Shown: piece after piece, positions 44,543 through 45,612 of the stretch
How the letters are laid out: the number at the start of each line of letters is the position of its first letter
Position numbering within the stretch: the first letter of the stretch is position 1
Assembly: GCA_025603075.1 (NCBI GenBank)
Contig: MU626344.1
Span: 1 to 64,000 of the forward strand
Direction: 5' to 3'
DNA length: 64,000 nt
Source: Neoconidiobolus thromboides FSU 785
Lineage: Eukaryota; Fungi; Entomophthoromycota
Made by a program: the position numbers and the translations under genes
Notes under the pieces: generated by a model
Databases searched by the model: none
What the model was told of the DNA's origin: nothing
What the model saw: only the letters and a program-made list of their open reading frames with translations

Positions 44543-45612
44543 CTAGCAGCATCCATTATTTGATGAAGAGGGGTTAATTGGGAGTGAGCGATAAGGTCCA
44601 TTAGGTTGGCCAACTTTAATACCAGCCGACTAAAAGAGTTAATAATTAAGATAAATTTAAAAATGGCTTACTTCATGATTGATATCAAGGATTCCCTGTT
44701 GAATTTTATTAAAAATGTTCTCTGCTGTATTTAAAAATGCCTATTATCGAGTTAGCTCAATTTCTATGGTTTTAAATTTCTTTACTTTTTCAACATTATC
44801 AGACGTTTTTGCTGATGTTTCCATGAAGTACAATCCATTATCTTGGGCGAACTTTTCACCTTCTTCACGTGACACTTCACGTCTAGCTTCTAAATCGCTC
44901 TTATTACCAATTAACATTATGGTTGTGTTTTGACTTGAATGCTCTCTGGCATCATCTAGCCAAGTGCTAATATGTTGGAACGTCTCTCTTCTATGTACCA
45001 GCATATCAATATTTTATTTTAATAGTATAAATATAGGTATACCTAGTAATATCATAAACTAGTAAAGCACCAGCAGCACCACGGTAATAACTACGGGTGA
45101 TACTTCTAAAAGATTCTTGGCCCGCCTTAATTTAGTTAATAAAAACAAACTTTAAATAGTTTTAAATTGTTATACTGTATCCCAAATCTGTAACTTTATT
45201 TTTTTATCTTCTACCTATTCATAAAGTTAGAAATAACTAACTTAAATAATAATAAAATACATTGACGAATCTAGCACCAAACTCAACACTAAAGATATTA
45301 TAATCATATATTTATAATTTTAGTTATTATTACCCAATGGTCAAGTCGTGGGCTGGTAAAAAACGCTTGTCGGTGAATTGTAATAATAAGCATGACTAAA
45401 AGTTGTTTAATATAAATAAAAATGGAAAAAATTTATCAACCTTCCCAACGCCTAAAAACAGATTTATAAATGTAAAATAAATTAAAGAAAAAACGCTTAC
45501 CAGTATCACCTATAATAATATACTTGAAAAGATAATCATGTATGTTTAAAGTTAAGGGATATAATATTAGTTGTTATTATAAGTATGGTAAAAAAAGGAT
45601 ATAATTTGACAT
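44543..45612 (-). CDS. RAB2: Rab2 small GTPase, many short exons; first intron is AT-AC
   Basis: [46 protein letters not shown]; [22 protein letters not shown]; ETSAKT; C-terminal CC. Confidence 0.97.
45540..45602 (-). other. U12-type (minor spliceosome) AT-AC intron, 63 nt
   Basis: 5' ATATCCTTTTT; branch point TCCCTTAAC ending 11 nt before the 3' AC; no AG anywhere between the ATG and exon 2; removal gives M-S-N-Y-D-Y-L-F-K. Confidence 0.9.

What the first reader, a model, noticed from the sequence alone, without database searches (positions are those of the whole stretch)
45540..45602. 63-nt U12-type AT-AC minor intron is required to express RAB2 in a compact fungal genome
Seen: on the minus strand the gene reads ATG TCA AAT T|ATATCCTTTTTTT...ATCCCTTAACTTTAAACATAC|AT GAT TAT CTT TTC AAG. 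The 5' site ATATCCTTT, the branch point CCTTAAC about 11 nt from the end and the terminal AC match the U11/U12 consensus. There is no AG dinucleotide between the start codon and exon 2, so a GT-AG solution is impossible. Retention gives a TAA stop after 11 codons, and no other in-frame ATG precedes the P-loop. Known: most fungi, including Dikarya, lost the minor spliceosome, and it survives patchily in early-diverging lineages. Inferred: this organism keeps a working minor spliceosome that handles very short introns, and this first intron could be a rate-limiting control on Rab2. It is the only U12-like intron among the introns I checked in the window, and a standard gene predictor would probably mis-call the RAB2 start.
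Basis: partly seen in the sequence, partly recalled or inferred. Interest (0 to 1): 0.8.

Follow-up and report, generated by a model that had tools for sequence, protein, structure and literature searches.

The report
Real U12-type AT-AC intron in RAB2
A 63-base intron with the rare AT-AC "minor spliceosome" signature sits in the fourth codon of the Rab2 GTPase gene of an AT-rich early-diverging fungus, and RNA data show it is removed; such introns are already known in this fungal group, so it is a solid but ordinary example that the deposited gene annotation missed.

Summary
Observation confirmed. On the minus strand a 10-exon Rab2 gene (210 aa, 45612..44543) has a 63-nt first intron (45602..45540). 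The intron starts ATATCCTTT, has CCTTAAC 11 nt before a terminal AC, and contains no G at all. RNA-derived contigs from two samples skip exactly these 63 nt; a 2-nt slide makes AT-AC one of three equivalent cuts. The same contigs also splice out the eight GT-AG introns (42-52 nt) and an 11-nt microexon. Retention gives two in-frame TAA stops after 11 codons, and no other ATG precedes the P-loop, so removal is needed for a functional protein.

Use of the minor spliceosome is inferred, not shown. No snRNA lies in the window and the rest of the genome was out of reach. The "rate-limiting control" idea has no support here.

Minor introns in Zoopagomycota and Glomeromycota were described by Larue & Roy (2023), so this is a new member of a known kind. 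The scan had already noted this stretch in an overlapping window, and similar AT-AC introns in at least six other genes of the same genome, probably Neoconidiobolus thromboides. The intron position is absent from Endogone and from 57 other eukaryotic Rab2 loci.

The parts
44543..45612 (-). Rab2 GTPase coding region: 10 exons, 210 aa, ending in the GCC prenylation motif. Exons: 45612-45603, 45539-45501, 45451-45441, 45395-45334, 45288-45261, 45214-45176, 45125-45043, 44990-44786, 44740-44672, 44629-44543.
   Evidence: Model built. All junctions are seen in RNA contigs. It is 71-80% identical to Rab2/Rab-2A proteins. PF00071 Ras is recorded on the annotated product.
45603..45612 (-). Coding part of exon 1 (ATG TCA AAT T). 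The intron follows the first base of codon 4 (phase 1).
   Evidence: An RNA contig is colinear from 45601 up to 45856, so no other upstream exon is used in that contig.
45540..45602 (-). 63-nt AT-AC U12-type intron
   Evidence: Sequence. The 63-nt skip appears in RNA contigs of X1 and X2. In X1 the depth of bin 45520-45600 (25.3) equals 113.9 x 18/81, so nothing covers the intron interior.
45594..45602 (-). 5' splice site ATATCCTTT, a 9 of 9 match to the AT-AC U12 consensus, followed by four more T
   Evidence: It is unlike the local U2-type donors GTAAGC, GTAATA, GTATAA and so on.
45551..45558 (-). Branch-site motif CCCTTAAC (core CCTTAAC). The branch A at 45552/45553 lies 12-13 nt from the terminal C at 45540.
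45501..45539 (-). Exon 2, encoding (Y)[13 protein letters not shown], the start of the P-loop
   Evidence: The junction to the microexon is seen in RNA.
45441..45451 (-). 11-nt microexon (exon 3), encoding the GVGK part of the P-loop
   Evidence: RNA contigs join 45397 to 45500 with 8 letters between them, plus the joint 45450>45500. An 11-nt microexon lies at the same place in Endogone sp..
44543..45359 (-). Extent of the deposited (truncated) RAB2 gene model: 178 aa, lacking the P-loop
   Evidence: L001 17952-18768 converted to window coordinates.

Best explanation
The 63 nt at 45602..45540 (minus strand) are a genuine U12-type (minor-spliceosome) AT-AC intron in phase 1 of codon 4 of a Rab2 GTPase gene. 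The host is an AT-rich, intron-dense early-diverging fungus, probably Neoconidiobolus thromboides (Entomophthoromycotina). Proposed mechanism, by analogy with the established U12 pathway: the U11/U12 di-snRNP recognises ATATCCTTT and CCTTAAC together. U6atac then replaces U11 at the 5' site. The branch A at 45552/45553 attacks the 5' site, and the exons are joined at the AC 12-13 nt downstream. Shown here: the intron exists, it carries both consensus elements at the right spacing, it is removed from RNA, and removal is required for an ORF that includes the P-loop. Inferred: that the minor rather than the major spliceosome removes it, and that the organism has the four minor snRNAs and their specific proteins. 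The intron is best read as constitutive and not as a demonstrated regulatory device.
For: Sequence: a 9/9 match to the 5' splice site, the CCTTAAC core, 11 nt to the terminal AC, and no G in the intron. The 5' motif paired with a branch motif is unique in the 64 kb: 1 seen against 0.23 expected. RNA contigs from two samples skip exactly 63 nt, compatible with AT-AC, and the same contigs remove the neighbouring GT-AG introns and keep the microexon. The spliced ORF gives [21 protein letters not shown]..., a Rab2 N-terminus 71-80% identical overall to Rab2 proteins. Retention gives two TAA stops after 11 codons, and no alternative ATG exists. The eight other introns of the gene have U2-type GT donors quite unlike ATATCC. 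Context: the scan noted AT-AC U12-like introns in HBS1, Tlg1, a DHHC protein, CLP1, a cyclophilin (a follow-up agent's note reports its removal in RNA) and MCM9. It also noted 65K- and 35K-like genes in the same genome; these are unchecked leads. Literature: minor introns and all four minor snRNAs occur in Rhizophagus, and Basidiobolus (Zoopagomycota) has 249 minor introns (PMC10639083).
Against: No minor snRNA or minor-specific protein was seen by me. In this organism U2-type introns also carry CTAAC/TTAAC 9-12 nt from the 3' end, so the branch-site half of the signature discriminates less than it does in animals. The junction has a 2-nt slide, so AT-AC is chosen over AT-AT or TA-CA by consensus, not by the reads. 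The RNA evidence is assembled contigs from one study, not raw reads. A scan note reports an AT-AC intron without a U12 signature in RPL27 of the same genome. If that note is right, the major spliceosome can handle some AT-AC introns here.
Confidence: 0.88

Rival explanations
1. The intron is a real AT-AC intron but is removed by the major (U2-type) spliceosome, like the rare U2-type AT-AC introns of animals.
For: Local U2-type introns use TTAAC/CTAAC branch sites at the same 9-12 nt distance, so the branch site fits both systems. A scan note reports an AT-AC intron lacking the U12 signature in RPL27 of this genome (unchecked). Minor snRNAs were not seen by me.
Against: The 5' site matches the U12 consensus at 9 of 9 positions. 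It differs from every U2-type donor confirmed in this locus at positions +1, +5 and +6. U2-type AT-AC introns keep a U1-like donor (ATAAGT-like; established knowledge). The CC before TTAAC extends pairing to U12. The chance of TATCCTTT at a fixed place in this base composition is about 4 in 100,000 (own estimate from composition).
Confidence: 0.06
2. The intron acts as a regulated, rate-limiting step that tunes Rab2 output. This is the reader's added idea, a refinement of the main explanation and not an exclusive alternative.
For: In animals some U12 introns are spliced slowly and have been proposed as rate-limiting (PMC4066798, PMC4615840; titles and abstracts seen). A retained intron here would stop translation after 11 codons.
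Against: In run X1 no contig covers the intron interior, while the spliced form has depth 114. In Rhizophagus minor splicing showed no proliferation-linked up-regulation, and the authors favour neutral persistence (PMC10639083). No quantitative data exist for this gene.
Confidence: 0.1
3. The 63-nt skip is an artefact (reverse-transcriptase template switching at the AT/AT repeat, or an assembler error), and RAB2 really starts elsewhere.
For: The junction is flanked by a 2-nt direct repeat. The evidence is contigs from one study. The deposited model starts elsewhere.
Against: The skip is seen in two samples at depths 114 and 36, in contigs that also carry correct GT-AG junctions. A 2-nt repeat is too short to drive template switching. 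The skip restores a conserved Rab2 N-terminus and coincides exactly with both U12 motifs. The deposited model lacks a start codon context and the P-loop, so it is plainly truncated.
Confidence: 0.02

Closest known systems
U12-type (minor) introns of early-diverging fungi: Rhizophagus irregularis (205) and Basidiobolus meristosporus (249), Larue & Roy 2023, PMC10639083
   Same: [quoted passage not shown] Found in a non-Dikarya fungus. A phase other than 0. The host gene belongs to vesicle-mediated transport, the category enriched among Rhizophagus minor-intron genes.
   Different: A different species and gene. The intron is absent from the deposited annotation, so annotation-based catalogues would miss it. 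I could not check whether RAB2 carries it in those two species.
Classical AT-AC U12 introns of animals and plants
   Same: ATATCCTT donor, TCCTTAAC-like branch site 10-15 nt from a terminal AC, and no need for a polypyrimidine tract (established knowledge).
   Different: Much shorter (63 nt). It sits in a genome whose U2 introns are 42-52 nt and have equally close, yeast-like branch sites.
Very short minor introns of Blastocystis (median 39 bp, 77% AT-AC; PMC10639083)
   Same: A very short, AT-AC subtype minor intron in a compact genome.
   Different: An unrelated lineage. Blastocystis minor introns favour phase 0, whereas this one is phase 1.
U2-type AT-AC introns
   Same: AT-AC termini.
   Different: Those keep a U1-type donor sequence. 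This one has the U11/U6atac-type donor.

Membership tests
U12-type (minor spliceosomal) intron | 5' splice site [A/G]TATCCTT at the first intron base | tested here: met
   ATATCCTTT at 45602-45594, 9/9.
U12-type (minor spliceosomal) intron | Branch-site consensus TCCTTAAC about 10-15 nt upstream of the 3' splice site | tested here: met
   CCCTTAAC at 45558-45551, with the branch A 12-13 nt from the end. Caveat: local U2 introns have TTAAC/CTAAC at a similar distance.
U12-type (minor spliceosomal) intron | AT-AC (or GT-AG) termini | tested here: met
   AT..AC when the cut is placed at 45602/45540. The reads allow a 2-nt slide (AT-AT, TA-CA, AT-AC), all giving the same mRNA.
U12-type (minor spliceosomal) intron | Actually removed from transcripts | tested here: met
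   A 63-nt skip in RNA contigs of X1 and X2.
U12-type (minor spliceosomal) intron | Removal depends on U11, U12, U4atac and U6atac snRNPs present in the organism | not testable with these tools
   Only the 64-kb window was searchable. Rfam found no family at gathering score. 65K and 35K genes are only unchecked scan notes.
Rab2 subfamily GTPase | Ras/Rab fold with a P-loop GDTGVGKS, best similarity to Rab2, and a C-terminal double-Cys prenylation motif | tested here: met
   The spliced product has GDTGVGKS, WDTAGQE, GNKSD, ETSAK and a terminal GCC. It is 78% identical over 186 aa to a protein named Rab-2A (P0201). PF00071 is recorded on the annotated product.

The most novel reading that the evidence does not exclude
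The RAB2 codon-4 intron may be a lineage-specific minor-intron gain (or a relic kept only in Entomophthoromycotina). This fungus may carry a sizeable, AT-AC-rich set of very short minor introns that annotation-based surveys have missed because gene callers truncate the host genes. The position is absent from Endogone and from all 57 other eukaryotic Rab2 loci whose 5' exon I could read, and every U12-like intron the scan noted in this genome is AT-AC.
Probability: 0.15. Interest if true: 0.6.

Novelty: new member of a known kind. Interest (0 to 1): 0.27.

Why it matters
The finding adds a transcript-supported minor intron in an entomophthoralean fungus and corrects a public gene model that lacks the GTP-binding P-loop. 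It also shows concretely why catalogues built from annotated introns under-count minor introns in such genomes. It does not change what is known about minor splicing in fungi. Its wider value would come only from a genome-wide re-annotation, which could give the number of such introns, the share that are AT-AC, and whether they were gained or retained.

Tried and rejected
1. GT-AG alternatives. There is no G in the intron. The only nearby AG (the end of TTCAAG in exon 2) would delete YLFK, and the upstream donor at 45727 puts the frame into a stop. No RNA contig uses either.

2. Finding close relatives' RAB2 loci.
- The exon-8 piece found only fragments of 82% identity or less, and the best one (P0005) had no DNA.
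- The neighbouring 391-aa ORF gave no hits at all.
- A profile of a Rab2 representative plus exon 8 returned only animal Rab2A.
- Attempts to align all exon pieces to a scaffold were mis-aligned by MAFFT and dropped.
- The Coemansia erecta contig lacks the 5' end.
- The AT-rich metagenome locus L007 shares exon boundaries but starts at residue 42.

3. Introner or repeat origin. The intron has no other copy in the window, and the 25-nt similarity at 49233-49257 is a chance match antisense to a WD40 gene.

4. A second U12 candidate at 52166 (+). It is antisense to the BARD1-like ORF and its branch motif lies 358 nt away, so it was rejected.

5. Organism identity. The assembly accession occurs in no searchable paper. 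The name Neoconidiobolus thromboides rests on earlier scan follow-ups. It is consistent with a single JGI-type assembly and with a Chang et al. 2022 genome cited in PMC11105155, but I did not verify it.

Full report
**What is there.** The window is very AT-rich, 19-35% G+C in 2-kb steps. On the minus strand between 45612 and 44543 lies a 10-exon gene. I assembled it from the sequence and checked it against RNA-derived contigs.

The product is 210 aa. It carries all the Rab hallmarks (GDTGVGKS, WDTAGQE, GNKSD, ETSAK, C-terminal GCC). It is 71-80% identical to Rab2 proteins from many eukaryotes, for example 78% over 186 aa to a protein named Rab-2A.

Eight introns are GT-AG and only 42-52 nt long. 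Exon 3 is an 11-nt microexon (45451-45441). The first intron (45602-45540) is different:
- It is 63 nt long.
- It begins ATATCCTTT.
- It contains CCCTTAAC followed by 11 nt.
- It ends in AC.
- It has no G at all.

**Check of the observation.**
- There is no AG between the ATG and exon 2.
- Because 63 is a multiple of three, read-through stays in frame and meets two TAA codons after 11 codons.
- The exon-2 frame has no ATG back to the stop at 45576-45574. The next in-frame Met of the protein lies beyond the P-loop.
- The octamer RTATCCTT alone is not unusual in this composition: 10 hits against 7.9 expected.
- The donor motif followed within 150 nt by CCTTRAY occurs once, here, against 0.23 expected from shuffles. 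No other candidate in the window survives inspection.

**RNA evidence.** Five RNA runs hold about half of the sampled words of the locus, as expected for spliced transcripts. Four of them were laid on 43900-46300.

Contigs of X1 (word depth 114) and X2 (depth 36) show a 63-nt skip, reported as 45537>45601 with two letters that fit either side. The cut can therefore be placed as AT-AT, TA-CA or AT-AC, and all three give the same mRNA (ATGTCAAATT joined to ATGATTATC). Only AT-AC coincides with a known splice-site class, and it coincides with it perfectly.

The same contigs run on through exon 2 into the microexon, and the other runs confirm every GT-AG junction. These are therefore processed transcripts.

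In X1 the depth of the bin 45520-45600 (25.3) equals 113.9 x 18/81. Nothing in that run covers the intron interior. Contigs drop rare forms, so this does not exclude some retention.

**Which spliceosome.** The donor matches the U12-type AT-AC consensus at 9 of 9 positions. It is unlike any of the eleven U2-type donors confirmed in this stretch, such as GTAAGC, GTAATA, GTATAA and GTAGAC. The branch motif and its 12-13 nt distance to the 3' end also fit.

One caveat applies. The local U2-type introns themselves carry CTAAC or TTAAC 9-12 nt from their 3' ends. The branch-site half of the signature therefore carries less weight here than in animals. The donor and the CC before TTAAC carry most of the argument.

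I could not test the defining feature, dependence on U11/U12/U4atac/U6atac. Indirect support comes from three sources:
- Earlier notes of this scan list AT-AC U12-like introns in HBS1, Tlg1, a DHHC protein, CLP1, a cyclophilin (a follow-up agent's note reports its removal in RNA) and MCM9.
- They also list 65K- and 35K-like genes in the same genome.
- Larue & Roy 2023 (PMC10639083) found 205 minor introns and all four minor snRNAs in Rhizophagus, and 249 minor introns in Basidiobolus, a member of Zoopagomycota.

The scan notes are unchecked leads. One of them (an AT-AC intron in RPL27 without the U12 signature) keeps the U2-type rival alive at a low level.

**Source and annotation.** An exact look-up of the neighbouring 865-aa BARD1-like protein places the window at positions 1-64000 of MU626344.1 in assembly GCA_025603075.1. 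That protein is alone in its 90% cluster, so no sister assembly is in the collection.

Earlier follow-ups of the scan call the organism Neoconidiobolus thromboides. This fits a single JGI-style assembly attributed to Chang et al. 2022 (PMC11105155), but I did not verify it.

The deposited RAB2 model runs from 45359 to 44543 and gives 178 aa. It starts at codon 33 inside exon 4. It lacks exon 1, the AT-AC intron, exon 2, the microexon and the whole P-loop. Larue & Roy themselves warn that minor introns are often unannotated, and their catalogue is built from annotated introns.

**Conservation.** Close relatives could not be fetched (see "tried and rejected").
- In Endogone sp. (L082) the gene starts MSTYNYIIK and shares intron 2, the 11-nt microexon and intron 3 with this gene. 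It has no intron in codon 4. Instead a GT-AG intron follows codon 9.
- Among 80 metagenome Rab2 loci, 57 had a readable first coding exon. Nearly all read ATG...[10 protein letters not shown] without interruption, and none has a U12-like intron there.
- Some GC-rich alga-like loci have a GT-AG intron 4 nt downstream of the equivalent point.

The position thus looks restricted to this lineage. Without other Entomophthoromycotina, gain and retention cannot be told apart.

**Regulation.** Nothing here speaks for a rate-limiting role. The idea is borrowed from animals (PMC4066798, PMC4615840). In the only fungus examined, minor splicing was not up-regulated with proliferation, and the authors argue for neutral persistence.

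**Verdict.** This is a real, transcript-supported U12-type AT-AC intron that must be removed to make a functional Rab2. It is a new member of a known kind, with a useful correction of a public gene model. Interest is low to moderate.

Noticed in passing
window 44543-45359 (-): The deposited annotation of MU626344.1 calls RAB2 as a 178-aa product starting at codon 33. It lacks the P-loop, the microexon and the AT-AC intron.
   Followed up: yes
window 45441-45451 (-); L082 about 1028-1038: An 11-nt microexon encodes part of the P-loop (GVGK). It is confirmed by RNA contigs, and an 11-nt microexon lies at the same place in Endogone sp., so this exon structure is old.
   Followed up: partly
window 45835-46284 (+): A divergent prefoldin (PF01920) gene lies with only 222 nt between the two start codons. 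One RNA contig (X1, 362 nt) runs from RAB2 exon 3 through the RAB2 5' UTR into spliced prefoldin exon 2. Either the 5' ends of the two divergent transcripts overlap or the assembler merged them.
   Followed up: partly
window 45930-46042, 45366, 45081: Pairs of RNA contigs differ at several positions (for example 5 differences over 113 nt, at depths 563 and 797). They look like two alleles or strains in the RNA samples.
   Followed up: no
window 46352-47527 (-), part of the annotated 603-aa gene at 46352-48310: A long ORF with no Pfam domain and no detectable homologue in the 5.8-billion-protein search. It may be lineage-specific or of low complexity.
   Followed up: partly
window 44030-46121, eleven confirmed U2-type introns: U2-type introns here are 42-52 nt, and several carry yeast-like CTAAC/TTAAC branch sites 9-12 nt from the 3' end. 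This weakens branch-site-based discrimination of U12 introns in this genome.
   Followed up: partly
L003, L021, L038, L050 (GC-rich metagenome loci): Alga-like Rab2 genes have a GT-AG intron in codon 4 (phase 2), 4 nt downstream of the position equivalent to the AT-AC intron. It is near that position but not the same.
   Followed up: partly
window 45647: The X2 contig lacks one base in an A/T run of the RAB2 5' UTR. This is a length variant or an assembly slip.
   Followed up: no
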